Shown here: one piece after another, positions 1 through 11,723 of the stretch
Numbering within the stretch: the first letter of the stretch is position 1
Layout: each line of letters starts with the position of its first letter
NCBI GenBank assembly: GCA_964035545.1
Contig: CAXIUT010000266.1
Coordinates: forward strand, 1 to 11,723
Length of the DNA stretch: 11,723 nt
Source of the DNA: Bugula neritina
Taxonomy: Eukaryota; Animalia; Bryozoa
Direction of reading: 5' to 3'
The notes under the pieces: model-generated
The model's input: only the letters and a program-made list of their open reading frames with translations
Database searches by the model: none
What the model was told of the DNA's origin: nothing
Program-made: the position numbers and the translations under genes

Positions 1-87
1 CCCAACCCCAACCCCAACCCCAACCCCAACCCCAACCCCAACCCCAACCCCAACCCCAACCCCAACCCCAACCCCAACCCCAACCCC
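1..87 (+). repeat. Left telomere, (CCCCAA)n
   Basis: Perfect CCCCAA tandem array from the first base to 87; this is the Tetrahymena-type telomeric repeat, C-strand at the 5' end. Confidence 0.97.
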
Positions 88-126: not shown

Positions 127-528
127 ATGAACCGTTAGTCCTACCCATGCCAACAACCCCTCCATCTAACAACCCACTCTATCTCTCACTATTCCCATCT
201 AAAAAAATCATCATCTCATAAAACAACAAGACAACCACTTTCAGAAGAAGTCCTCAATCGTAGATAAACACTCCTTCTAAGAACCAGAAAGGCCAGCCTT
301 CAAAAAACAAGCCAATAAAATTTATTTCTTTTCAAAAGAATAAACTCCCAAAGATCAATGGTCAACAGCCTTCGTCCTCAAACAGCAACAACAAAAACAT
401 CAAAAAAACATCTATACTCTACCAACGAAAACATCGACTTAGATAAACTAGACCAAATCATATCCAAGAGAAAAGGAGAGATCGATCGGTGTTTGAAAGT
501 TAAAGCAGTTGGAATGTATGTAGGATGA
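127..528 (+). CDS. Hypothetical protein, 133 aa (TAR=Glu)
   Basis: ATG 39 nt from the telomere after an AT-rich leader; open to TGA at 526-528 (MNRESYPCQQ...SLQKTSQENLFLFKRINSQRS...RPQTA...GMYVG*). No family is securely recognised and the 3' end is uncertain. Confidence 0.6.
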
Positions 529-794: not shown

Positions 795-2725
795 TCATTT
801 ATTCTTTTTAAACATAGAATTCAAAGCAGTACTACTTTTGATTCTTTTCAATCCAGTAGATTTCTTGAGATTATGAATAGATTTATCACCTGGCTGTTTT
901 ATTAATGATTTGTCATCTCTTTTCTTTGCTCTTTATATCAAATTCAACTGTTTTTTACTTTTCTGTTTCTTCAATTTCTTTTTAGGTCGCAACTACGATG
1001 TAGGCTACTTATGTCCAATCTAAATATTAAAATGATCTAATTTCTATCTAGACATAGACGATTTAAATCCATTATTCTTTTTTGTAAACTACTTTATCGA
1101 ATTAGATTGCGGCACTTTCAGACTTTTGTTTTATTTTGTACTATCAGATTTGACTGAAGGAAGCGCCTAATCCAATATGTTCATCTCTTAGTATCGATTG
1201 AAATAAAAATCTTAAAACTAATGCTTAAATTACATATCATCTGACATTATCTTTCGAATAAACTACTATCCTCCTTACTATATCTATTACTAGTTTATGT
1301 TAAAAGTCATCAAATTGATCTTAATAGGAGTCTATACCGTTTTGTTTATGATATCTGCAGGTTTTAACTTTCTCACCCAAGGATGACTCAGAATTTATCT
1401 AATACCACCCATCGAACCCAACCTTCTCTTCGGATCTTTTATCAATAAACCCTATAGAAGCATTCTTATTTCATATGAAAGGTCCACATGAGAAGGAAAA
1501 TCTATTTACTAGTTTTGAATAGAGTAGTAAATCTTATCTACATCTCTTGAATAAAAAGGAGGATTTCCTGTTACTAGTTCATACAGAAGTGCTCCTAAAC
1601 AATAGTAGTCAACTGAATAAGAATGTCCTTCTCTGAATCACATCAAAATTACTTAGTTAGCATTTCTGGTGCCATGTATTATGGACTGCCGCAATATGTA
1701 GTTGCAAGTTAGTTTCCTCTGATACCCTAACGGCTTAATCCAAAATCTGCTATTTTGAGATTACCGTGCATATCTATCATAATATTTTAGGGTTTTATGT
1801 CACGGTAGATGATATGCTGGTTGTGAAGATATTGAATGCCTAGAAGTATTTATACAAAACAGTAGCGGGCTTCATCTTCTGTCATTCTTTTTACTTTGCG
1901 GAGATAGTAGAAAAGCTATCCTCCTGGACAATCTACATCAAGAGTTTTTTACATTAGAGAGCAAGTGCCACGAAGTGTTTGGATTCAAAAGCAAATTCGA
2001 GATTTACTATATATGGACTGTTGAGACCTACAAGAATGTTTCTTTAGTTGGTAACAACACATTCCTTTCCACTTTAGAGCAATCCATCTTTTTCCATAAG
2101 TTTTAATGCATAGAAAGTACCTGTACTTTTTAGTCTAACTAAAAAGACTCGACTGAATCCACCTGTTCCTATGCATTTGATGATTTAGAAATCTTACAAA
2201 GTGACTTTCTCAACCATTTTATCTTTCCAAACTGGTTCTATTTCCAACAGTTGTCCTTTGAATTCCTTGATAGGTTTGCTAGTTTGAAAATAGTAGTCTT
2301 TAAGAATATCACCTCTTCCACTACTCTTCCAATTACTTATACTTGCTGGAGAGAAGTCCTTATTGTCTAAGTTAAAAGAGATAAGTACTTAGAATTTAGT
2401 GTTAGAAGCGAGTGATATGAGGTATTACTGTCTCATGTAGATTTTTATTATCACAAGTGGTGATGGGAATAGATATTCTTTTTCCTTTGTAGTTTACTTT
2501 TATTAATATTTCTGGAGGTTTTAGTTCTTATATTTTTTTCTTTACTAGCGTTTTTCCTGTGTTTTTTTTGTTATGAGCGACTGTTTTAGCAGGATGATGG
2601 CTGATTGTTAGTTTAGAATTAGAGCTGCGTAGGTTAGGACTGGAACTACGTTTGTCTTTAGATTTCGAAAGAGATGGTTGACGGTTTGATTATTTAGGAG
2701 CTGATTTTCTACGATTACTTTGCAT
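795..2725 (-). CDS. AGC-family Ser/Thr protein kinase, about 622 aa; exons 2725-2389, 2366-1953, 1932-1653, 1632-795
   Basis: KVTLEDFEIIKCIGTGGFSRV, YALK, NERNIL, LEYCPGGELF, YRDIKPEN, ADFG, TYCGSPEYMAPE, DYYCLG, KDPKRRLG, HPW and a C-tail FEDFYF. Three frame-restoring introns (22, 20, 20 nt); ends in TGA. Confidence 0.95.
1633..1652 (-). other. 20-nt spliceosomal intron (AGC kinase)
   Basis: gtaattttgatgtgattcag; removal joins APEMLTK to EGHSYSVD. Confidence 0.92.
1933..1952 (-). other. 20-nt spliceosomal intron (AGC kinase)
   Basis: gtaaaaaactcttgatgtag; removal gives LEYCPGGELF. Confidence 0.93.
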
Positions 2726-3058
2726 GCTTATAATTTAAAATTAACTTATAAGGGTGACTTAATTTAGTCAAATGATATAAATAAAATAATTGGAATAATA
2801 TGTTTTAAATTGTTTATTTTCATTTAAATTTATTATTTTATCGAAAGAAATGAGATTGAATATAATGTGAAAAATAATATTGATGATAAATACTTTGAAC
2901 ATTTTATTTAAAATATTTCGCTTAAAGTTGTTATTAAAGATTATCTAAAAAATGAAAATGAAAAAAAAAAAAAAATATATAAATATAAATACTATTTTTC
3001 ACTTTGTGATATCAATACAAAATCGTAATAAAAGAGTCTCAATAAAAAGTGAAATTAA

Positions 3059-4220
3059 TCAAAATATATTTTTCTGTGAAGCTATCCTTGGCAATTTGAC
3101 ATATCCATTTGGTGATTGCAATGGAACCTATATTAAAACAAAAGTACCCTCATATGTTCAGCTTTATCATTCTATTTCTCATCTTTATAAAATTTGAATG
3201 GATGCACATTCACTGGTAAATTTTTACTTGATCCGATTTTCTTCAAACTACGAGGATAGTTTTCTCTTGGCGATTCCTCTCTCTAGATATCCTTGATAGT
3301 AACTAGTCTTTTAACCGATTTTGATTCAGGTAGCTGGTTATGTAAATTTTTTAACATCTTTGGACAACGAATTGTATCCAGAAGTTATATTTCTCCCTAC
3401 TAGTAGTTCTACATTTATCTGAATATCTATATCCTAAGTAATTCTTTAGGCATTGGTCTTTGATACATCTTAACCTGAAGACAACTTTTGATCAAATCTG
3501 TCAAATTTTTAGAATAACCCACTGGGATAGGCTCATAGTATCCTAGAGTCACCTTTCTACTCAAACCTGGAAAATCTTTAGCGATAAACGGTGGTCTTAA
3601 AGTTGCCAGTTCGTAGAGTACACAGCCAAATGACCAAACATCAACTCTTCCATCATATTTGGAGTTATTCCAAATTTATGGACTAGTATAGTATGGCGTA
3701 CCTGTTTGTGTTGAAGCATATTTTCCATCAAGAACTTTAGAAACATTGAGGTCTCCTAACTTAGCAATTCCATCGACAAAGAAGATGTTCGCAGGTTTGA
3801 TGTCTCGATGAATGATATGATTTTCATGTAAAATTTTTAGACCTTTCAAGATATCATAGGCTACTTTCCAGATAAAATTTTAACTAAATCTGTGACTTTT
3901 TTATCTTTTACGTTTGATTAGTCCCTAAATAGTGAAAAATATACTGCGAGGTCTCCTCCATCTGCATACTCCATAAGGATGCAGAGAGTATTACCAAATT
4001 ATTCAAAGAAAGCTGTTTTGTATGAGATGATGTTAGGAGAGTCAATGCTGGCTAATAGTCTAACTTCATTGAGTGCATTGTCTTTCTATCTGGCATTGAG
4101 AGTCATCATTTTGATTTGTTTCATGGCGTAGACTTAATCTTGCCTTTTGTTTTTGCGGACTTTAACTACCCTTCCAAAACTACCTGTTCCTAGTTCTTTG
4201 AGAAGCTCAAACTATTTCAT
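3059..4220 (-). CDS. NIMA-related (NEK) kinase with the DLN variant motif, about 373 aa; exons 4220-3945, 3924-3148, 3127-3059
   Basis: LGTGSFGRV, YAMK, EKDNALNEVRLLASI, MEYADGGDL, HRDIKPANIF, KLGDLNVSK, TQTGTPYYTSPEIW, DVWSFGCVLYE, LLDTIRCP. Two 20-nt introns; the second is inferred from intron consensus only. Confidence 0.95.
3925..3944 (-). other. 20-nt spliceosomal intron (NEK kinase)
   Basis: gtatatttttcactatttag; removal joins DGGDLA to GLIKRKR and restores the kinase frame. Confidence 0.92.
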
Positions 4221-4397
4221 AGAAGAATATAATACTATTGTCTATATCTTTGTATATAAATAACAGCTCTCTTTAATCATAGATTTTGATAGGACAATTA
4301 AATGATGCCAGTTGATGGTATGATAGATATAGATAGATGATGTATGAGATGATGATGCAAAAAGGTAAATATAGGTTGATAATAAATAAATTTAGTA

Positions 4398-5690
4398 ATG
4401 TAAAACTTCAGGGTCTTTTAGAACATAATAAAAACAAAGTACTTCTCTTTCTATCGTGCCTAAAACAACCAGAACAAAGAAGGTGTGATAATAAAGAAGT
4501 TGCATAAGGAAAGTACTTGGTAAGATATCCTTAAAAACAAAGACATATCGTTGATGAATCACTCTAAAATATAAGAAATAGCTAATATTCAACAAATAAT
4601 CAAAGACTAGTTCAACTTCTTCTGCGTTTTTCCCAACCTAGAATTCAACCTCTAAAAAGTCATCCGGAGTGAACTCCAAAAAGAAGACATCTTTAAGATA
4701 AGTAGAACCATCATACAGATGGCAGTTCATCTACATTAACATAAATTGGTGCCAAGAGAACTCAGACCATCTTCGCTCTTTGTCACTGCTGATTACCAGT
4801 CTATCAAAATAGCACATTTGGAATCACATTGGAATAGAGATCTCTCTGGCTTGGATCTGGTGGAACTACAAGATCTCAGATATTTATCACCTTAATCTGT
4901 TCTTACTAGCAGAGATATCGATTAAAGATCTACTGTCTTTTCGGTTGGTTTACTTATTGCCTAGTTGATTCTTGGTAGACCTCTGCTTTCATCCAATACA
5001 AAAATGAACTATATCTATGAAATGACTAAGTTGTTTCCTGAGGAATCATTGGAACAGGGACATGGAGAGATGGTATCTAAATCTAAGGTAGGTAGTGAGG
5101 ATGAAACTTTTTAGAGTGTGATGGGACAATTCAACTTCAGTCGTCAATTTATATCTTTGATTCGGGAGATGCTCAAAATAGATAGAAATTAAAGGTTGAT
5201 TATAGACTAATTACTTGAGGCGTTTGATCTTATTGTGGCCAGTGAGTAGGATTTTCTAAAATAGAATTAATAGGAATAAGTTGTAGTTCAATAACCATAA
5301 CCGTAGTAATAAAAAGTAGTGGAATCTGAGCTGATTCAATCAGTATAGATTAATTTTTAGTTTTAAAAAGTAGCAACTCTATCAAACAGCCCTCATATCA
5401 AAGTTCATAACTCGGTTCTTCCAATTTAAAAAAATGTGGACGATGATGCTGTACAGCCAATTATCATTAAACAGTCTAGCAAACCACTGGATAATCAGAA
5501 TCAAGGACAAACTATGCCTATTTCTTTGTTAAAAGATCCAACCAAAATATCGAGAACTACCAAAAGACAAACTATTAGTACTGTTAAAAGACCTCAACTT
5601 ACCAACTATGCCATGAATGAAGGAAGCAGTCTGGGAGTGAAGTTAGGATTCCAACCTACTCTTTTTTCATAAAACGATAATGATTTATGA
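4398..5690 (+). CDS. CMGC (MAK/ICK-like) pseudokinase with an acidic, low-complexity C-terminal tail, about 430 aa
   Basis: Single open frame under TAR=Glu: MENF...VIIKKLHKESTWEDIL...CVFPNLEFNL...HLHEHKLVPRELRPSSLFV...IKIAHLE...RYLSPE...VFSVGLLIAELILGRPLL...LIREMLKIDRNER. Kinase subdomain order is intact but the catalytic motifs are degenerate. Confidence 0.85.
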
Positions 5691-5812
5691 TTCTGATGCT
5701 TTCTACCCATCTATAACTAATACTCCTATTTACTTGAACTACTTTGAATGCTAAAGCTTCAATAAAAACATAAAGGTTGCTCATACAAAGATGGGATATT
5801 AAAGTATAGAGA

Positions 5813-6058
5813 TCAATTTTTGACTTTAAAGGCACTTCCTTCAGTAAGTTTGCATTTTCCTCCAGTTGGCTTGCTGAGGATGTTTTTGCAGTTGTTGCAG
5901 GCTACGACTGTCTGTGCGTGGCTAAAGATAATGGCAGTTTCGTTGCAACCTCCACACTTTACGTCCATGAAGTAGGAGTTGGGTGAGGGAACTAGTCTTT
6001 TAAGTTTGTGTCTTTGCTTTTCGGTCTAGAGAGAAGGATGTAGGAGATCACGGTCCAT
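5813..6058 (-). CDS. RPS27: 40S ribosomal protein S27 (eS27), 81 aa
   Basis: [38 protein letters not shown]...[13 protein letters not shown]...[19 protein letters not shown]4 zinc finger present; one in-frame TAG (6028-6026) at a Glu position; no intron. Confidence 0.98.
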
Positions 6059-6236
6059 TGTTGGTAAGAAATATTAGCAATATTTTATATCAATTAATTA
6101 AAGAATTACTTTTAAACTCAACTCATCACTTTTCCAACCATATCTGATCAGATTCAACCAAATAATCAGATCATATTAATACAATAGTGATGAGAAAGTG
6201 CTATTATCAGTATTGAATAAAGATAGGCAGCAAAAA

Positions 6237-8675
6237 TCACTCATTCATACGAAAACCATACTTATTTTTCAGCAATAAAGATATCTATTACTTACAAGGA
6301 TATGTTTTCTCAATTTTTAACCCGTATTTACTGTATAGTGATATTTGGATTTATTCTTTACATGGAATAGGTTTACGCAAAGGTAATGCGTACTTGCTTT
6401 TCAAACTTATTTATATTTATTATCTGCATGCTCTGTATTCTTTTTCTTGTTTTGGTTAGACTTTATCTAAAGGATGCTAGCTTACTGTATTCTTTTATAA
6501 TACTTATTGTGGCGCTTTTTCATCAGATATTAGCTATTTTTATTCCTTTATTGAATCTTCCTATGGCGTAGCCTACTATTCGAGATTGAATGAAGTTGTA
6601 AGCTAAGGTACTTACTTTTCAATCACATTCAACTCATAAGGTTGACTAGCTTATATTTTTTTATTTGATTTTGCAAAAGACAACCGCTTTTCATCTTGAA
6701 CGAAAGAAGCCATATTAGGTATTTCTCCTGATTCTTAAAAACTCAAGTTTATAGCCACAATACTATTTGCTCTTGGAACTTAGAAATGATTGTTTGGTTC
6801 AACTTATTCTACCTTTTCTTTGTCAGCATTTACCTTCTTAGGAGATCTAGTAGAATTGGTCATCAAAGTGTCAGGTAGTCCATCATCGAAATCTCCATTA
6901 TCTTCTTCTTCTGATTTGTCAGAATCAAGAGGAAGGTCAGGTAGATCAGTATCATCATAGTAGTGATGGTTGGGACCTCCATCTTTTTAGTCAGGAAAAG
7001 GATCTTCTTCTTAGCTTAATACTTATTTGCCTTCTATTTAGTTACCTGCTGTATTGACCATAACATATCTATTTTTTTCTTTGTTTTTATTTTAGCCTCC
7101 TTCTTGGAAAGTTTTAATATCCAATGGTTTAAGAATGTTTTATTAGAAACTACCCCATTTATCATGATTTTTAGGATTTCCTCCTATACTGACATCATAG
7201 AAAGCTCTTTTATTTTTGAAGGTCTACTCTAAATCACTCCAACTAGTGGCTAAATAAAAAAATAATTACAAAAAGCACTATTTTCTTGTGCTTTATTTTT
7301 AACAGTTTATCCAATAAGAAAGATTTGACTTTCAAAACTGATTTTACTATTAGTTTAACTAACATGTGACCTCAAAGTAGAATCAAATTATAATTAATTT
7401 TGAAAAATATTACAAATTTGATGAGACTGCTTAATACCTAAAATAACTAGTTATTTTTGAAAGTTATGAAGAATGTTGTTATTTGGATCTTTTTTCATGA
7501 GACTAAGAGTCTGAGAAATAAATTATTTTGATATAATTTACTAGATAGCTAAAGAATCAAAAGATAGATAATTTTTAACTAATTTGTAAAAATGAATTAG
7601 CTACATACCTAAATATCAATATTATTACGATATTATGAAGCAAATTCTTGAGGAGGATGACTAATAATATACTTTTTAGCCATACATAAAAATTACTAAC
7701 TAATCTTGATATTTTAATTCCCTTAATTCTACTAAATAACTGATTTCTTGATAGGATCATGTATCCTCTGAAAAGCTTATACACAATGCAGCAACTATGT
7801 CTTAATATGTCTGTTATGATGGTATTTTTCAAGAAAGTTAAATAGGAATACATAATTAGCATTATCTGAGGTAATTTTATTCAATAAACTGATATATTTT
7901 GACCTATCATATTTATCTTAATGTTTTGATACTAAAGACTCATAAAATTATCCTAAACTTTAGATAACTGATTATATTTATTACTATTTTTAGAGATTAG
8001 CTATTTATACAAAAAATGATCGAACAAAAGTTGTTTTTTAATTCTAATAGAAATCGTTTTATCCCTATGCTTATAATACTTTAGAGACAAAATCAGACAT
8101 AGAAGGAGAACCAAAATATGTGACTATTATTTTAACTGCATTTTGTTTCAAATAGCTTATCATCTATATTATCAAATAAAGTACTTCTTCAGGTTTGTGG
8201 TAGATAAAAGGTGTAATTAGTTTTGAAAAATAAGCAAGTCCAGTTTCCTATACTTATTCATTTAAGACTTTAAAAATGAAGGTCAAAATTGGATATTATT
8301 GTTCTGTTTGAATAACTTAATCTTCTTGATTATCTTGTTAGAATATTTTTTATGTAAATTATTACGAAAGGTTGCTCAATATTTATATAGCCGCATGGGT
8401 CGTATTCTTATCAAGTATTTTGTTGTTTTTTCGCATAAATAAAACAGGATTGACTGCTATTTCTATCATCTAAAACAAAATATTTCTTCTAGTATCTGCT
8501 ATCAAGCTAAGTAGAAAAGTAAGTACATTTGAGTAAATTTGTTATTTTTGCATTTAACCTATTCGACCAAGCCTTTGACTTGTAACAGGTCTATAGCTGA
8601 GGAATGCTAGTTGAAGAGTTGAATAAAATTGATGCCTGAAGATTATTCAGGTTGTTGACTGCCCCATCTACTCAT
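6237..8675 (-). CDS. SAPS-domain protein (SIT4-associated / PP6 regulatory subunit-like), about 785 aa; exons 8675-8527, 8506-8185, 8163-7629, 7608-7270, 7249-6237
   Basis: MSRW...IDLLQVKGLVEEVKCKNNKF, AAIEILS, ETGLAYFSKLITPFIYHKPEE, SPSMSDFVSKVL, EYRMELI, PNNNILHN, then a long Asp/Glu-rich tail. Motif order matches the SAPS family. Four introns of 20-21 nt; the 21-nt one (8164-8184) is in frame and less certain. Confidence 0.8.
6240..6428 (-). repeat. Three tandem 22-aa (66-nt) coding repeats at the C-terminus of the SAPS protein
   Basis: CREEIEISLKSKYALPLRKPIP / CKEEIQISLYSKYGLKIEKTYP / CKEEISLLLKNKYGFRMNE*. Confidence 0.85.
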
Positions 8676-8755
8676 TCTTGGTTAAATCAATTCGATTATT
8701 ATCTGTTTAAATCAAAAATAAAGTTCTTTCAAATATCTCATAACTTATTTATACC

Positions 8756-9667
8756 ATGTTTTACTCAGGAGTTAAATAGAATCCCTACCCAGATCTTTAA
8801 TAAAAAAAAGAACAAAAAGAATAAAATCCCTACGCCTCCAAAAGTACCCATCCTCTCACCAAGAAGTTGAGCCCTCTCAAGACATCTTCTCCAAACATAA
8901 ATAATCAAGCAATATTAGAAATTCAGTGTTTTTAAAGTAAACTGAAGAATAACAATCAAAGGGTTGCTGTGATAAATGTTGCGCTTGCTTTTCGATCGAT
9001 TATTACAAGGAGCACTTCAAAGTCACCAACAAAATGGTCTTTGATCGCATTAAACTAAACCTCAAATTCTGGTCAGGAGGCTTCTTCTAAGACCTCAAAG
9101 CCGACTATGACCTGTACTACTCTCTTACTTAGCTATGGACCTCTCTGGCTTTATGCTACGATGACTTTTCTTGCCAGTGCAGTCCACAATGTTTTGAAAT
9201 ACAAATCCAATCCTGATACCTTTGAGTATGATTTTCAGGTGATCGGTGTCGCAGGAGGTCTTTTCTTTGTTCTAGGTCTTGTTCTTTCAGCAGTCTATGG
9301 AGCTCTTTTCGGATGCATGGGTCTTAACTGCAAAACAATGCACATCATATGTATCTATGGATACTCGATGTCAAACTATATCATTTGTACTCTTTTATGC
9401 ATCATTGATGTGAGACTGCTTACTTGGATATTGCTCCTATATGCAGCAACAGCAAAGGTAGTTTTTATATTGAAGAATATGTTCGATAAATTAAATGTGC
9501 CAACAAGTAAGAAGATAATGGTGTTGGTGCTGGTCATAGCCTAAGCAGCAATTCAATTTTTAGCAATAAAATTTGCTTTAATAGTCCATCACGATTCAGT
9601 TCAAACGATAACACAGGTAACATCTGGCCATCAGATGTATTTAAGAACTCATGAAGGAATGATATGA
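8756..9667 (+). CDS. Yip1-domain membrane protein (YIPF1/2-like), about 290 aa; exons 8756-8843, 8864-9113, 9133-9667
   Basis: CFSIDYYKEHFKVTNKMVFDRI, then DLYGPLWLYAT (reconstituted across a 19-nt intron), ICIYGYSM, and about five hydrophobic segments; ends in TGA. Confidence 0.92.
9114..9132 (+). other. 19-nt spliceosomal intron (Yip1 gene)
   Basis: gtactactctcttacttag; removal creates the DLYGP signature. Confidence 0.92.
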
Positions 9668-9698
9668 TAAACAATTCATTATAATAAAATCAAATAGA

Positions 9699-10057
9699 TC
9701 AATCTTTTTTTGGACGAATTACCAAAGGAGGATCTTTCTTGTAATTTTAAGGATCTTTTACTGCACGATAAATGTATACTCCGATCACAATGTTGATAAA
9801 TATTATGCTTGGAATTATCGAATAAGCTGTCTTCTAGAGTTCACTCATTCCAGGAACATCTTTTAAGTAGGCTTGACTACCAAGGACCAACAAAATAGGC
9901 AGTCCAATGATCAGAAAAGAAGTCAAAAGGAACTAGAATATCACTTTTTTGGAGGCGAAGGGAAGTCCAAAGCTGAGTGAGTAATGATTTACAAGTAGAA
10001 AGGTTTTTATTTTTATTATTCGAAGGTTCGGACTTGATCAGGCTATGCTGTTGTCAT
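9699..10057 (-). CDS. VMA21-like V-ATPase assembly factor, 112 aa; exons 10057-9993, 9972-9699
   Basis: Small two-TM protein: VIFEFLLTSFLIIGLPILLV...YSIIPSIIFINIVIGVYIYRAVKD...RPKKD*, with a dilysine-like C-terminus. One 20-nt intron. Confidence 0.75.
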
Positions 10058-10116
10058 TATATTATCAACATATCAATTCTGATATTTGACTATATATAAA
10101 TTGTTGATACATATGA

Positions 10117-11448
10117 TCATGCAAATTTGGTCTTTAGACCTTTCTAAACTTCACTTAACTCTTGCTTGTTCAGTCTTTACCAGTATTAGATTTGCTTTTT
10201 AGTGTATTTGTTTGTTTTAGGTTAATTTTATATGTTTTTCATTGTCTTCAATGCACTTTAAACTACTTCTTTGAACTCTTATTCACTTGTTCCACATTGC
10301 AAAGTGTACTTGTAGATAGATGTTTTTTGAAGGAAAGCGAAACGACATTTGTTTTCTTCTTCACTTTCAATTACTTCATCTAAGAAGACCAACTCTTGTT
10401 TAAATATACTTTTTATGGTTTCTTCTATCCATTTTTTCGACAGCTGATCTTCAAATAATCTACCCGTCGATTCAAGTTTGATTTCAACTGATTTGTTTAA
10501 ATTTGATGCAAAAGTAATCTTTGGACTAGTATATTTAACTTTCCAACGATCAGATTGCAATTTACCTGACAATCCTTAAAGCTAAACATTATCTCCTTCG
10601 ATTAACTATCTAAAACTACTGACTTTCATATTAGTTATTAGCGTATCATAACCCTAATTTTTAATTTGACAGACCACAAAAGCAGGTACTAACTGTCCTA
10701 ATAGCCAATTATAGTACAACCATGGAGCTTATTCATGTGGATTTAGAAAGATAGCAGTTTTTACTTTTTAAAGCTAAACATTAAGTTGATTTTTTGGCAT
10801 ACCAAATGTGAGTATTTACTGTTTTTCTGAAGATGGAATATCTTTATTAAGCTATTATGTATATTTTTGACAAATAAATTTGCTACGGAAGTAATAGGGA
10901 GAGAAATTGAATGGATTCGATGTTATTTTCTAATTAGTAAACTAAATTTACTAATCAATAAAAGATTGAATAGAATTAAGCCAATTTCTATAATTCCAAA
11001 CATGAAAATTCTTTTAATCTTTCATAAGTAGCATCTTAATCAACTATTTTTATGCCTTAATAACAGCAGAATTAATTTTAAACAATGATTTTAGGGGTTG
11101 GGGTTGGGGTTGGGGTTGGGGTTGGGGTTGGGGTTGGGGTTGGGGTTGGGGTTGGGGTTGGGGTTGGGGTTGGGGTTGGGGTTTACTAATATCATCTTGA
11201 TTTTTATTTTTTATGGCTAGTTCTATTAATTCTCTTCTGAAATTAAAGACTGTAGGGATATCTGAAACTAATTGCATGAGTAAAGCTATAAATTATAGAT
11301 ATTTTGGTATTTGTTATGGATTGATGTTGTTTCTTGGTATAGCAAAAAACTATCCTAATTTGTTGTTTATTTTTATTGAGAGCTATTCTTACTATTTTAA
11401 CTCTATATCACTTTTCTAACGTTTTGTTCGTTTATAACCATGGATCAT
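10117..11448 (-). CDS. RABGGTA: Rab geranylgeranyltransferase (GGTase-II) alpha subunit, interrupted in frame by a telomeric tract at 11094-11183
   Basis: N-terminal MIHGYKR; PPTA repeats SDIPTVFNFRRELI, KDEKNFHVWNYRNWL, EEIEFTNEKITSNPFNFSPYYFRSKF and ELEKVKTAIFLNPHEEAPWLYYNWLL. The expected second repeat (PKSY..W.HR type) is absent where (PQ)15 is read. Confidence 0.88.
11094..11183 (+). repeat. Internal telomeric tract (GGGGTT)15
   Basis: Perfect 90-nt array in the same orientation as the right telomere. Confidence 0.95.
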
Positions 11449-11510
11449 TTCTGATTGTTTAATATTGATATTTATAATTAATCAATCATTTTTAAAAATA
11501 TGAGATAAAA

Positions 11511-11591
11511 GGGGTTGGGGTTGGGGTTGGGGTTGGGGTTGGGGTTGGGGTTGGGGTTGGGGTTGGGGTTGGGGTTGGGGTTGGGGTTGGG
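11511..11591 (+). repeat. Internal telomeric tract (GGGGTT)n, 81 nt
   Basis: Perfect array starting 62 nt upstream of the RabGGTA ATG, followed by 51 nt of AT-rich unique sequence. Confidence 0.95.
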
Positions 11592-11642
11592 ATAGTTAAT
11601 TTTTATTATTAGAATTATTATTATTCTTTTATTAATGATTCA

Positions 11643-11723
11643 GGGGTTGGGGTTGGGGTTGGGGTTGGGGTTGGGGTTGGGGTTGGGGTTGGGGTTGGGG
11701 TTGGGGTTGGGGTTGGGGTTGGG
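11643..11723 (+). repeat. Right telomere (GGGGTT)n
   Basis: Perfect array running to the last base, G-strand at the 3' end. Confidence 0.97.

What the first reader, a model, noticed from the sequence alone, without database searches (positions are those of the whole stretch)
795..11448. Reassigned genetic code: TAA and TAG both encode glutamate; TGA is the only stop
Seen: in-frame TAA/TAG occur at conserved Glu positions. In the AGC kinase these are the alphaC N[E]R (TAA 2046-2044), GG[E]LF (TAG 1918-1916), KP[E]N (TAA 1789-1787) and GSP[E]Y (TAA 1681-1679). Others are NEK SP[E] (TAA 3678-3676), pseudokinase SP[E] (TAA 4893-4895) and RPS27 HPSL[E] (TAG 6028-6026). Conserved Gln sites use CAR, and all eight recognisable genes end in TGA. 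Established: this is the rare peritrich nuclear code (table 30), not the TAR=Gln code of Tetrahymena/Paramecium. Inference: the organism is a peritrich, or an independent origin of the code. It should have tRNA-Glu with UUA/CUA anticodons and a UGA-specific eRF1.
Basis: partly seen in the sequence, partly recalled or inferred. Interest (0 to 1): 0.85.

Follow-up and report, generated by a model that had tools for sequence, protein, structure and literature searches.

The report
Ciliate contig using the peritrich code
The window is a small telomere-capped chromosome of a ciliate, sitting as a stray contig in another animal's genome assembly, whose genes read TAA and TAG as glutamate and stop only at TGA; this is the already described peritrich nuclear code, so the reading is correct but not new.

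Summary
It is a known code (NCBI table 30).

- **Claimed codons:** all seven TAA/TAG codons exist at the stated coordinates.
- **Decoding test:** I ran a Codetta-like test over the window plus 28 other ciliate kinase loci of the same assembly (8,077 aligned codons).
  - TAA (n=247) and TAG (n=121) both decode as Glu, with profiles like GAA/GAG.
  - Control codons CAA/CAG, AAA/AAG, TAT/TAC and TGG decode correctly.
  - At the alphaC Glu, the "mEy" Glu, the KPEN Glu and the APE Glu, paralogues swap GAR and TAR freely.
  - The HRDLK Lys column never uses TAA, and TGA never falls in a match column.
- **RPS27:** the TAG aligns to Glu in all 16 nearest relatives. The gene's TGA sits at the normal C-terminus.
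- **Strain variants:** variants in other public runs include GAA>TAA, TAG>GAG, GAG>TAG, TAA>GAA and TAA>TAG, among mostly synonymous changes.
- **Translation machinery:** the ciliate contigs carry two tRNA(CUA) genes and an eRF1 with NIKS changed to QIKD. I found no tRNA(UUA).
- **Context:** the window is one of about 300 C4A2-telomered contigs in a 216-Mb assembly of a standard-code animal.
- **Organism:** peritrich identity is inferred, not placed by rRNA.

First-stage readers of this scan noted the same code on many other windows of this genome.

The parts
1..87 (.). Left telomere, (CCCCAA)n
   Evidence: Read directly. The same C4A2 cap starts many other small contigs of the assembly.
127..528 (+). 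ORF of 133 codons next to the telomere, function unknown; 2 TAA and 1 TAG in frame, ends in TGA 526-528
   Evidence: TGA-only ORF model. No homology was tested.
795..2725 (-). AGC-type protein kinase. Two 20-nt GT..AG introns lie in the kinase domain (1952-1933 and 1652-1633). One more frame change upstream is unresolved. Stop is TGA 797-795.
   Evidence: Pfam Pkinase on stop-free pieces. The best PDB matches are SGK1, PKG, S6K, PKC and PKA. Intron model. Two strain variants (1939, 1947) fall inside the first intron.
2044..2046 (-). TAA at the alphaC-helix Glu of the AGC kinase
   Evidence: Profile column 58 (E 0.47). Ciliate paralogues there use TAA 12, GAA 11, TAG 7, GAG 2 and GAC 1.
1916..1918 (-). 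TAG in GG[.]LF of the AGC kinase
   Evidence: Codon confirmed. Profile column 94 is acidic (D 0.43 in NEK references). GGELF as the AGC/CAMK consensus is from established knowledge.
1787..1789 (-). TAA in HRDxKP[.]N of the AGC kinase
   Evidence: At column 141 the ciliate paralogues use TAA 8, GAA 6 and TAG 2; the rest are A, D, Q or S codons.
1679..1681 (-). TAA in CGSP[.]YMAPE (the AGC 'GTPEY' position, not the APE Glu)
   Evidence: Codon confirmed. The GTPEY consensus is from established knowledge. The NEK-based profile is not informative at this site.
3059..4220 (-). NEK-family protein kinase. 20-nt introns at 3944-3925 and 3147-3128. Stop is TGA 3061-3059, reached only after the second intron is removed.
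   Evidence: Pfam Pkinase 60 and 42 bits on two pieces. Relatives are named NIMA-related kinase. Model. Variants 3138 and 3139 fall in the last intron.
3676..3678 (-). TAA at the APE glutamate of the NEK kinase
   Evidence: The flanking pieces end at Pfam Pkinase position 166 and resume at 168. Profile column 180 (E 0.78). Paralogues there use GAA 13, TAA 13, TAG 3 and GAG 1.
4398..5690 (+). Intronless kinase-like gene without HRD or DFG (pseudokinase); 31 in-frame TAA/TAG; stop is TGA 5688-5690
   Evidence: Matches the kinase profile. Model. Strain variants are TAG>GAG at 4962, GAG>TAG at 5097 and TAA>GAA at 5427.
4893..4895 (+). TAA at the SP[E] (APE) position of the pseudokinase
   Evidence: Profile column 180.
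5816..6058 (-). Ribosomal protein S27e gene, 81 codons, stop is TGA 5818-5816
   Evidence: Pfam Ribosomal_S27e 82 bits. There are 356 homologues. The C-terminus is within one residue of 113 of 120 homologues.
6026..6028 (-). TAG in HPSL[.]TEK of RPS27
   Evidence: The aligned column is E in 74 of 120 homologues and in all 16 nearest ones.
8756..9667 (+). Yip1-domain membrane protein. Introns of 20 nt (8844-8863) and 19 nt (9114-9132). Stop is TGA 9665-9667.
   Evidence: Pfam Yip1, E 7.7e-5, below the family cut-off. Splice model restoring DYDL|YGPLW.
9699..9848 (-). Short ORF for a small membrane protein, function unknown, ends in TGA
   Evidence: TGA-only ORF model. The start codon is not certain.
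10117..11034 (-). Gene of about 305 codons with W..YR.WLL-like repeats, function unknown, 28 in-frame TAA/TAG, stop is TGA 10119-10117
   Evidence: ORF model. No Pfam family at E<=0.01 above cut-off. The prenyltransferase-alpha resemblance is my own reading only.
11096..11175 (.). (GGGGTT)n array: right telomere of the 11-kb chromosome
   Evidence: Read directly.
11510..11723 (.). Two further (GGGGTT)n arrays (11510-11592 and 11643-11723). They are separated from the first array and from each other by 334 and 50 unique bases.
   Evidence: Read directly. The same layout of one C4A2 start followed by several G4T2 arrays is seen on contigs C10, C11, C14 and C15.

Best explanation
The window is a complete macronuclear chromosome of about 11 kb from a ciliate, most likely a peritrich. 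It was co-assembled with a larger animal genome.

In this ciliate UAA and UAG are ordinary glutamate codons. They supply about half of all Glu codons in kinase domains. UGA is the terminator.

Shown:
- the meaning of TAA and TAG;
- the absence of in-frame TGA;
- TGA at the natural end of RPS27;
- dedicated tRNA(CUA) genes on ciliate contigs;
- an eRF1 with an altered NIKS motif.

Inferred:
- UAA is read by a tRNA(UUA), which I did not find;
- the CUA/UUA tRNAs are charged by GluRS;
- the altered eRF1 no longer recognises UAR;
- the organism belongs to Peritrichia.
For: **1. Codons and contexts** are confirmed.

**2. Profile decoding** used a kinase HMM built from 56 reference kinases.
- TAA (n=247) decodes as E, log-likelihood 141 against Q 53, D 48 and K 37.
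- TAG (n=121) decodes as E, 74 against D 33.
- Controls GAA, GAG, CAA, CAG, AAA, AAG, TAT, TAC, TGG, GAT and TTA all decode correctly.
- TGA occurs 0 times in 8,077 aligned codons.

**3. Column usage among paralogues**:
- alphaC Glu: TAA 12, GAA 11, TAG 7, GAG 2.
- mEy: GAG 9, TAG 9, GAA 8, TAA 4.
- APE: GAA 13, TAA 13, TAG 3.
- Column-wise correlation with Glu codons is 0.77 for TAA and 0.65 for TAG.

**4. RPS27:** the TAG column is E in all 16 nearest relatives, and the TGA lies at the conserved C-terminus.

**5. eRF1:** the ciliate eRF1 (L001) was aligned to the standard-code host eRF1. Eight of 12 TAR positions are E in the host, including DF[E]PFKP, RLRx[E]KRHNY, GG[E]NG and NQAI[E].

**6. 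Strain variants** in other public runs are GAA>TAA (2265), TAG>GAG (4962), GAG>TAG (5097), TAA>GAA (5427) and TAA>TAG (3385). None goes to CAR, AAR or TAY. The background is mostly synonymous changes.

**7. tRNA:** two tRNA(CUA) genes score 62 and 57 bits against Rfam tRNA. They lie on contigs C256 and C10, which also carry recoded kinases or C4A2 telomeres.

**8. Relatives:** environmental relatives of the NEK gene decode the same way.

**9. Literature:** UAR=Glu is the peritrich code (PMC10553269; Sanchez-Silva 2003, cited in PMC4967479). Peritrich genomes have narrow, tiny intron length distributions (PMC13685798). The 19-20-nt introns here fit that.
Against: - There is no protein or RNA evidence. 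No RNA run holds the sequence.
- I found no tRNA(UUA), and no canonical tRNA-Glu of the ciliate to compare backbones with.
- The tRNA(CUA) anticodon arm looks Gln-like by my own recollection.
- Four of 12 TAR positions in eRF1 align to non-Glu host residues (R, Q, P, A). All four are variable or E/Q-exchangeable sites.
- Peritrich identity was not tested with rRNA: the SSU search failed twice.
- The reference kinases are mostly NEK-family and partly from uncharacterised metagenomic proteins.
Confidence: 0.92

Rival explanations
1. A code with no dedicated stop: UAR=Glu plus UGA=Trp or stop by context, as in Blastocrithidia (table 31) or Condylostoma. Another first-stage note on this genome (s1-435652) suggested this.
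For: The search table lists 1-3 TGA inside six ciliate kinase matches. The NEK reading frame has no TGA for 706 codons unless an intron is removed.
Against: - In all six kinases the TGA lies in an out-of-frame stretch between roughly 20-nt introns, and the true frame carries the conserved sequence.
- TGA occurs 0 times against TGG 52 times in 8,077 aligned codons. The DxWSxG Trp column is TGG 26, with the rest F or Y codons.
- eRF1 (437 codons) and all window gene models need no in-frame TGA.
- RPS27 ends at TGA exactly where its homologues end.
Confidence: 0.04
2. Split or ambiguous meaning of the two codons. Either UAA=Lys with UAG=Glu, as in Oligohymenophorea sp. PL0344, or UAR read partly as Gln (first-stage note s1-434031).
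For: - Gln is the second-best assignment for TAA.
- One TAA in eRF1 aligns to Q in the host.
- The tRNA(CUA) anticodon arm resembles tRNA-Gln (own recollection).
- The literature infers a Gln stage in the ancestor (PMC10553269).
Against: - GAA shows the same runner-up pattern (D 65, Q 54).
- TAA sits in Gln-consensus columns 1.2% of the time, like GAA at 1.9%, against CAA at 10.7%.
- The Lys columns never use TAA: HRDLK is AAA 25, AAG 7, AGA 1.
- Strain variants link both TAA and TAG to GAR only.
Confidence: 0.03
3. The code is UAR=Glu but the organism is not a peritrich, so the same reassignment arose independently in another ciliate lineage.
For: No rRNA or phylogenomic placement was obtained. 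C4A2 telomeres and tiny introns are not exclusive to peritrichs.
Against: - UAR=Glu among ciliates is reported only from Peritrichia (PMC10553269).
- The narrow tiny-intron distribution matches what is reported for three peritrich genomes (PMC13685798).
- The sequence turns up in runs labelled with three different organisms. It is absent from other runs carrying the first label, as expected for an attached or co-occurring ciliate.
Confidence: 0.08

Closest known systems
Peritrich nuclear code (NCBI translation table 30; Sanchez-Silva et al. 2003; Vorticella, Opisthonecta, Carchesium, Campanella)
   Same: TAA and TAG both read as glutamate, TGA is the terminator, and the other tested codons are standard.
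   Different: I found no difference in the code. The carrier is unidentified and sits as a passenger in an animal genome assembly.
Oligohymenophorea sp. PL0344 code (UAA=Lys, UAG=Glu; PMC10553269)
   Same: UAG=Glu, UGA is the only stop, and the organism is an oligohymenophorean-type ciliate.
   Different: Here UAA is Glu, not Lys. TAA is absent from the invariant Lys column and shares the Glu columns with GAA. Introns here are about 20 nt, against a median of 57 nt in PL0344.
Standard ciliate code (table 6; Tetrahymena, Paramecium)
   Same: UAR is reassigned, UGA is the sole stop, telomeres are C4A2, and the eRF1 N-domain is modified.
   Different: UAR is Gln there and Glu here.
Blastocrithidia code (table 31)
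   Same: UAR=Glu.
   Different: There UGA=Trp and UAA also terminates. Here TGA is never in frame and it ends RPS27 at the conserved C-terminus.

Membership tests
Peritrich nuclear code (table 30) | UAA encodes glutamate | tested here: met
   n=247, best residue E by 88 log units over Q. TAA shares the alphaC, KPEN and APE Glu columns with GAA. Strain variants include GAA>TAA and TAA>GAA.
Peritrich nuclear code (table 30) | UAG encodes glutamate | tested here: met
   n=121, best residue E. The RPS27 TAG column is E in all 16 nearest relatives. Strain variants include TAG>GAG and GAG>TAG. Four of 5 eRF1 TAG positions are E in the host.
Peritrich nuclear code (table 30) | UGA is a stop codon and is not used as sense | tested here: met
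   There are 0 TGA in 8,077 aligned kinase codons. The apparent in-frame TGAs are out-of-frame read-through. The RPS27 TGA lies at the conserved C-terminus. The sample is kinases plus two other genes, not the whole proteome.
Peritrich nuclear code (table 30) | Remaining codons are standard | tested here: met
   The eleven control codons tested all decode to their standard residue. The other codons were not tested one by one.
Peritrich nuclear code (table 30) | The carrier belongs to Peritrichia | tested here: inconclusive
   The SSU rRNA search of the assembly failed twice. Only indirect signs are available: C4A2 telomeres, 19-20-nt introns, and occurrence in runs of three differently labelled organisms.
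Peritrich nuclear code (table 30) | Cognate tRNAs with UUA and CUA anticodons charged with Glu | tested here: inconclusive
   Two tRNA(CUA) genes were found. My pattern and BLAST searches found no tRNA(UUA). Charging identity cannot be tested here.
PL0344 code (UAA=Lys, UAG=Glu) | UAA encodes lysine | tested here: not met
   The HRDLK Lys column is AAA 25, AAG 7, AGA 1 with no TAA. K is only the fourth-best assignment for TAA.
Ciliate code (table 6) | UAR encodes glutamine | tested here: not met
   TAA and TAG fall in Gln-consensus columns 1.2% and 0.8% of the time, against 10.7% for CAA and 17% for CAG.
Blastocrithidia code (table 31) / codes with no dedicated stop | UGA encodes tryptophan | tested here: not met
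   TGG 52 and TGA 0 in match columns. The conserved Trp column is TGG 26 with no TGA.

The most novel reading that the evidence does not exclude
The two tRNA(CUA) genes begin U1-C2-C3 or A1-U2-C3, have a 4-nt variable loop, and carry a GGNCU-CUA-AANCC anticodon arm that I recall as typical of tRNA-Gln. They may be descendants of the ancestral oligohymenophorean UAR=Gln suppressor tRNAs that switched to charging by GluRS. That would make this genome a direct record of how a second reassignment (Gln to Glu) happened. Alternatively, the carrier may be a non-peritrich lineage that reached UAR=Glu independently.
Probability: 0.12. Interest if true: 0.7.

Novelty: already known. Interest (0 to 1): 0.27.

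Why it matters
The practical value lies in annotation and hygiene.

- About 300 contigs of this 216-Mb assembly belong to a ciliate passenger. They must be translated with table 30 and with roughly 20-nt introns removed. Standard gene callers break these genes into fragments, as seen in the 70-150-residue pieces in public protein collections.
- The contigs should not be attributed to the host animal.

Scientifically it adds a partial macronuclear genome of a UAR=Glu ciliate, with very small multigene chromosomes, tRNA(CUA) genes and an eRF1 carrying QIKD in place of NIKS. This is useful material for studying how eRF1 loses UAR recognition and how suppressor tRNAs change identity. It does not reveal a new code.

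Tried and rejected
- **SSU rRNA:** the search of the assembly (RF01960) failed twice with a machine error, so there is no rRNA placement.
- **tRNA(UUA):**
  - The pattern CTTTAAA..GTTCRANTC gave only non-tRNA hits. The one candidate on a ciliate contig (C108) is not a tRNA.
  - BLAST of the tRNA(CUA) against the assembly found only the second CUA gene, and the shared T-arm is unique to those two.
  - My first pattern had the wrong spacing and hit only host repeats.
- **Canonical ciliate tRNA-Glu:** the pattern found only host Glu and Asp tRNAs, so the 'Glu backbone' prediction could not be tested.
- **Accession look-ups:** searches for related assemblies (GCA_050043615, GCA_041192925, SRR14332048) in the paper library found nothing.
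- **Sequencing-run names:** run and organism names are coded, so neither the host nor the habitat can be named.
- **Pfam blanks:** Pfam gave nothing usable for the 10117-11034 gene or the pseudokinase piece.
- **Rejected readings:** UAR=Gln, UAA=Lys, UAR=Tyr and UGA=Trp, for the reasons given under the rivals. I also rejected pseudogenes or assembly errors as the cause of the in-frame stops. More than 100 kinase domains show the same pattern, and the strain variants are mostly synonymous.

Full report
**What the window is**

The 11,723-base window starts with (CCCCAA)n at 1-87. It carries (GGGGTT)n at 11096-11175, followed by two more G4T2 arrays. It is contig C275 of a 216-Mb assembly of 321 contigs.

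The large contigs C1-C9 carry kinase, eRF1 and tRNA genes with no internal stops. The tRNAs there look animal-type to me. These contigs are the assembly's main, standard-code organism.

About 300 small contigs begin with the same C4A2 repeat. Their protein matches are full of TAA and TAG. More than 100 Pkinase matches on them carry 1-15 TAA and 0-10 TAG each, and almost never TGA. The window therefore belongs to a ciliate macronuclear genome that was co-assembled with a host. The assembly also holds other passengers: contig C214 carries a dense cluster of 11 tRNA genes that looks organellar or bacterial to me.

**Check of the observation**

Pfam and PDB support the gene names:
- The two kinases hit Pkinase.
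- The best solved relatives of the first kinase are SGK1, PKG, S6K, PKC and PKA.
- Relatives of the second kinase are named NIMA-related kinase.
- The small gene at 5816-6058 hits Ribosomal_S27e at 82 bits.
- The gene at 8756-9667 gives a sub-threshold Yip1 hit.

At the NEK APE site, the stop-free pieces on either side end at Pkinase profile position 166 and resume at 168. The TAA therefore occupies the APE glutamate position.

**What TAA and TAG mean**

The tools do not take proteins read through stops, so I built a reference of my own.
- An 82-residue stop-free NEK piece retrieved 150 representative kinases.
- Fifty-six of them with a complete catalytic domain gave a 276-column profile.
- I aligned that profile to six-frame translations of the window and of 28 other ciliate kinase loci, masking all three stop codons.

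Summing profile log-odds over the aligned positions gives:

| Codon | n | Best | Runners-up |
|---|---|---|---|
| TAA | 247 | E 141 | Q 53, D 48, K 37 |
| TAG | 121 | E 74 | D 33, N 20, Q 17 |

Controls decode correctly: GAA/GAG to E, CAA/CAG to Q, AAA/AAG to K, TAT/TAC to Y, TGG to W, GAT to D and TTA to L.

Forty-four percent of TAA and 47% of TAG lie in Glu-consensus columns, against 13% of all codons (p 4e-32 and 1e-19). The figures are 50% for GAA, 69% for GAG, 16% for AAA, 30% for CAA and 4% for TAT.

The ciliate's own paralogues give the most intuitive evidence:

| Column | Codons used |
|---|---|
| alphaC Glu | TAA 12, GAA 11, TAG 7, GAG 2, GAC 1 |
| mEy Glu | GAG 9, TAG 9, GAA 8, TAA 4 |
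| KPEN | TAA 8, GAA 6, TAG 2 |
| APE Glu | GAA 13, TAA 13, TAG 3, GAG 1 |
| HRDLK Lys | AAA 25, AAG 7, AGA 1 |

TAR makes up 52% of Glu codons in these domains.

**Independent lines of evidence**

*RPS27.* The TAG at 6028-6026 aligns to E in 74 of 120 homologues. It aligns to E in all 16 nearest ones, which are 81-97% identical and use ordinary Glu codons there.

*eRF1.* The ciliate's eRF1 gene (contig C314, L001) was aligned to the host's standard-code eRF1 exons. Eight of 12 TAR positions are E in the host, at strongly conserved places (DFEPF, RLxxEKRHNY, KVAETAVQ, GGENG, NQAIE, IQEK). The other four are R, Q, P and A at variable positions.

*Strain variants.* Contigs from four other public runs were laid on 795-6060. 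Most differences in exons are synonymous. Those touching the codons in question are GAA>TAA (2265), TAA>TAG (3385), TAG>GAG (4962), GAG>TAG (5097) and TAA>GAA (5427). None leads to CAR, AAR or TAY. Four further variants fall inside the predicted 20-nt introns, which supports the gene models.

*Relatives.* Related NEK loci from metagenomes and two other assemblies decode the same way, with smaller numbers.

**Is TGA the only stop, and only a stop?**

TGA never falls in a match column, against 52 TGG. The conserved DxWSxG tryptophan is TGG 26, with the rest F or Y codons.

Six kinase matches were listed with 1-3 internal TGA. I fetched them and found that each TGA lies in an out-of-frame stretch between two tiny introns, while another frame carries the conserved sequence. 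This answers the suggestion in another first-stage note (s1-435652) that UGA might also be sense.

The RPS27 TGA lies within one residue of the C-terminus of 113 of 120 homologues. The eRF1 ORF ends at TGA after an acidic tail. By an alignment recalled from memory, that is where human eRF1 ends too.

One caution applies. In this AT-rich genome TGA-free frames run long, so 'ends in TGA' alone is weak evidence. The NEK frame has no TGA for 706 codons until a 20-nt intron (3147-3128) is removed, after which it stops at 3061-3059.

**Machinery**

ARAGORN and Rfam find two tRNA(CUA) genes (62 and 57 bits) on ciliate contigs C256 and C10. They are 85% identical by mean column identity in the pairwise alignment (80% in the BLAST match) and share a T-arm found nowhere else in the assembly.

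I found no tRNA(UUA) and no canonical ciliate tRNA-Glu. Whether the suppressors have a Glu backbone therefore stays open.

The ciliate eRF1 has RASQIKD where the host has TASNIKS. It keeps YxCxxxF as YNCDSRF, and has NGSVVT where the host has NGTSMIS. These are the motifs implicated in stop-codon recognition (PMC3632111). UGA-only specificity is an inference.

**Gene structure**

Introns are 19-20 nt with GT..AG ends. Examples are 1952-1933 and 1652-1633 in the AGC kinase, 3944-3925 and 3147-3128 in NEK, and 8844-8863 and 9114-9132 in the Yip1 gene. Removing them restores conserved motifs: ALAL[E]YCPGG[E]LF, GGDLAGLIK..FS[E]NFIW and DYDLYGPLW.

**Comparison with what is known**

UAR=Glu with UGA as the only stop is NCBI table 30. 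It was first described by Sanchez-Silva et al. 2003 (cited in PMC4967479). It was confirmed in Campanella and Carchesium transcriptomes (PMC4967479). It is stated to have arisen once, in Peritrichia, from an ancestral UAR=Gln state (PMC10553269).

The PL0344 code (UAA=Lys, UAG=Glu) is excluded here. Three peritrich genomes are reported to have narrow intron-length distributions like Paramecium (PMC13685798), which the introns here fit.

The window's sequence occurs in runs labelled with three different organisms in three studies. It is absent from other runs carrying the first label. That fits a co-occurring or attached ciliate rather than a host gene.

I could not place the organism by rRNA. 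'Peritrich' is therefore the best-supported inference, at about 0.85, not a result.

**Verdict**

The code is already known, and first-stage readers of this scan noted it many times on other windows of the same genome. The added points are these:
- the contig is a ciliate passenger in an animal assembly;
- the apparent sense TGAs are artefacts of tiny introns;
- UAR is not partly Gln;
- tRNA(CUA) genes and a QIKD eRF1 are present;
- the tRNA(UUA) and the tRNA backbone identity remain open.

Noticed in passing
window 11096-11723; also contigs C10, C11, C14, C15: After the G4T2 telomere at 11096-11175 the contig continues with 334 unique bases, a second G4T2 array, 50 unique bases and a third array. 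No C4A2 array lies between them. Other ciliate contigs show the same layout: one C4A2 start, then several G4T2 arrays. This does not look like a simple end-to-end joining of whole chromosomes. It could be an assembly artefact or alternative telomere-addition products.
   Followed up: no
G000 as a whole: The assembly is a mixture. Chromosome-scale contigs belong to a standard-code animal. About 300 telomere-capped contigs of 10-100 kb belong to the ciliate. Contig C214 carries a dense cluster of 11 tRNA genes that looks organellar or bacterial. Contig C212 has stop-free kinase ORFs of 803 residues, so it comes from some standard-code organism.
   Followed up: partly
window 1933-1952, 1633-1652, 3925-3944, 3128-3147, 8844-8863, 9114-9132: Spliceosomal introns of only 19-20 nt (GTA...AG) shift the frame inside conserved domains. 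Strain variants cluster in two of them.
   Followed up: partly
L049:2274-2344 (-) = G000:C304: A tRNA gene (51.8 bits against Rfam tRNA) with initiator-like features: three G-C pairs at the base of the anticodon stem and an AUCGAAA T-loop. Its anticodon loop has six bases, CUUAUG, so ARAGORN cannot name an anticodon.
   Followed up: partly
L001 (G000:C314:16448-19810), minus strand: The ciliate eRF1 gene has 437 codons with 20 in-frame TAA/TAG. NIKS is replaced by QIKD, and the GTS-loop region reads NGSVVT.
   Followed up: partly
L090-L096, L103-L109: Close relatives of the window's NEK and RPS27 genes occur in several lake and other metagenomes and in two NCBI assemblies (GCA_050043615.1, GCA_041192925.1). 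There they were called as short fragments between TAA/TAG codons. Public protein collections therefore hold many truncated pieces of such ciliate genes.
   Followed up: partly
L069-L080 (host contigs C2, C3, C4, C6): The host carries a family of tRNA-like sequences with a GCAAGC 'anticodon' region and a GGTTCGATTCC T-arm. ARAGORN calls them tRNA-?(Ala|Cys). They may be a tRNA-derived repeat.
   Followed up: no
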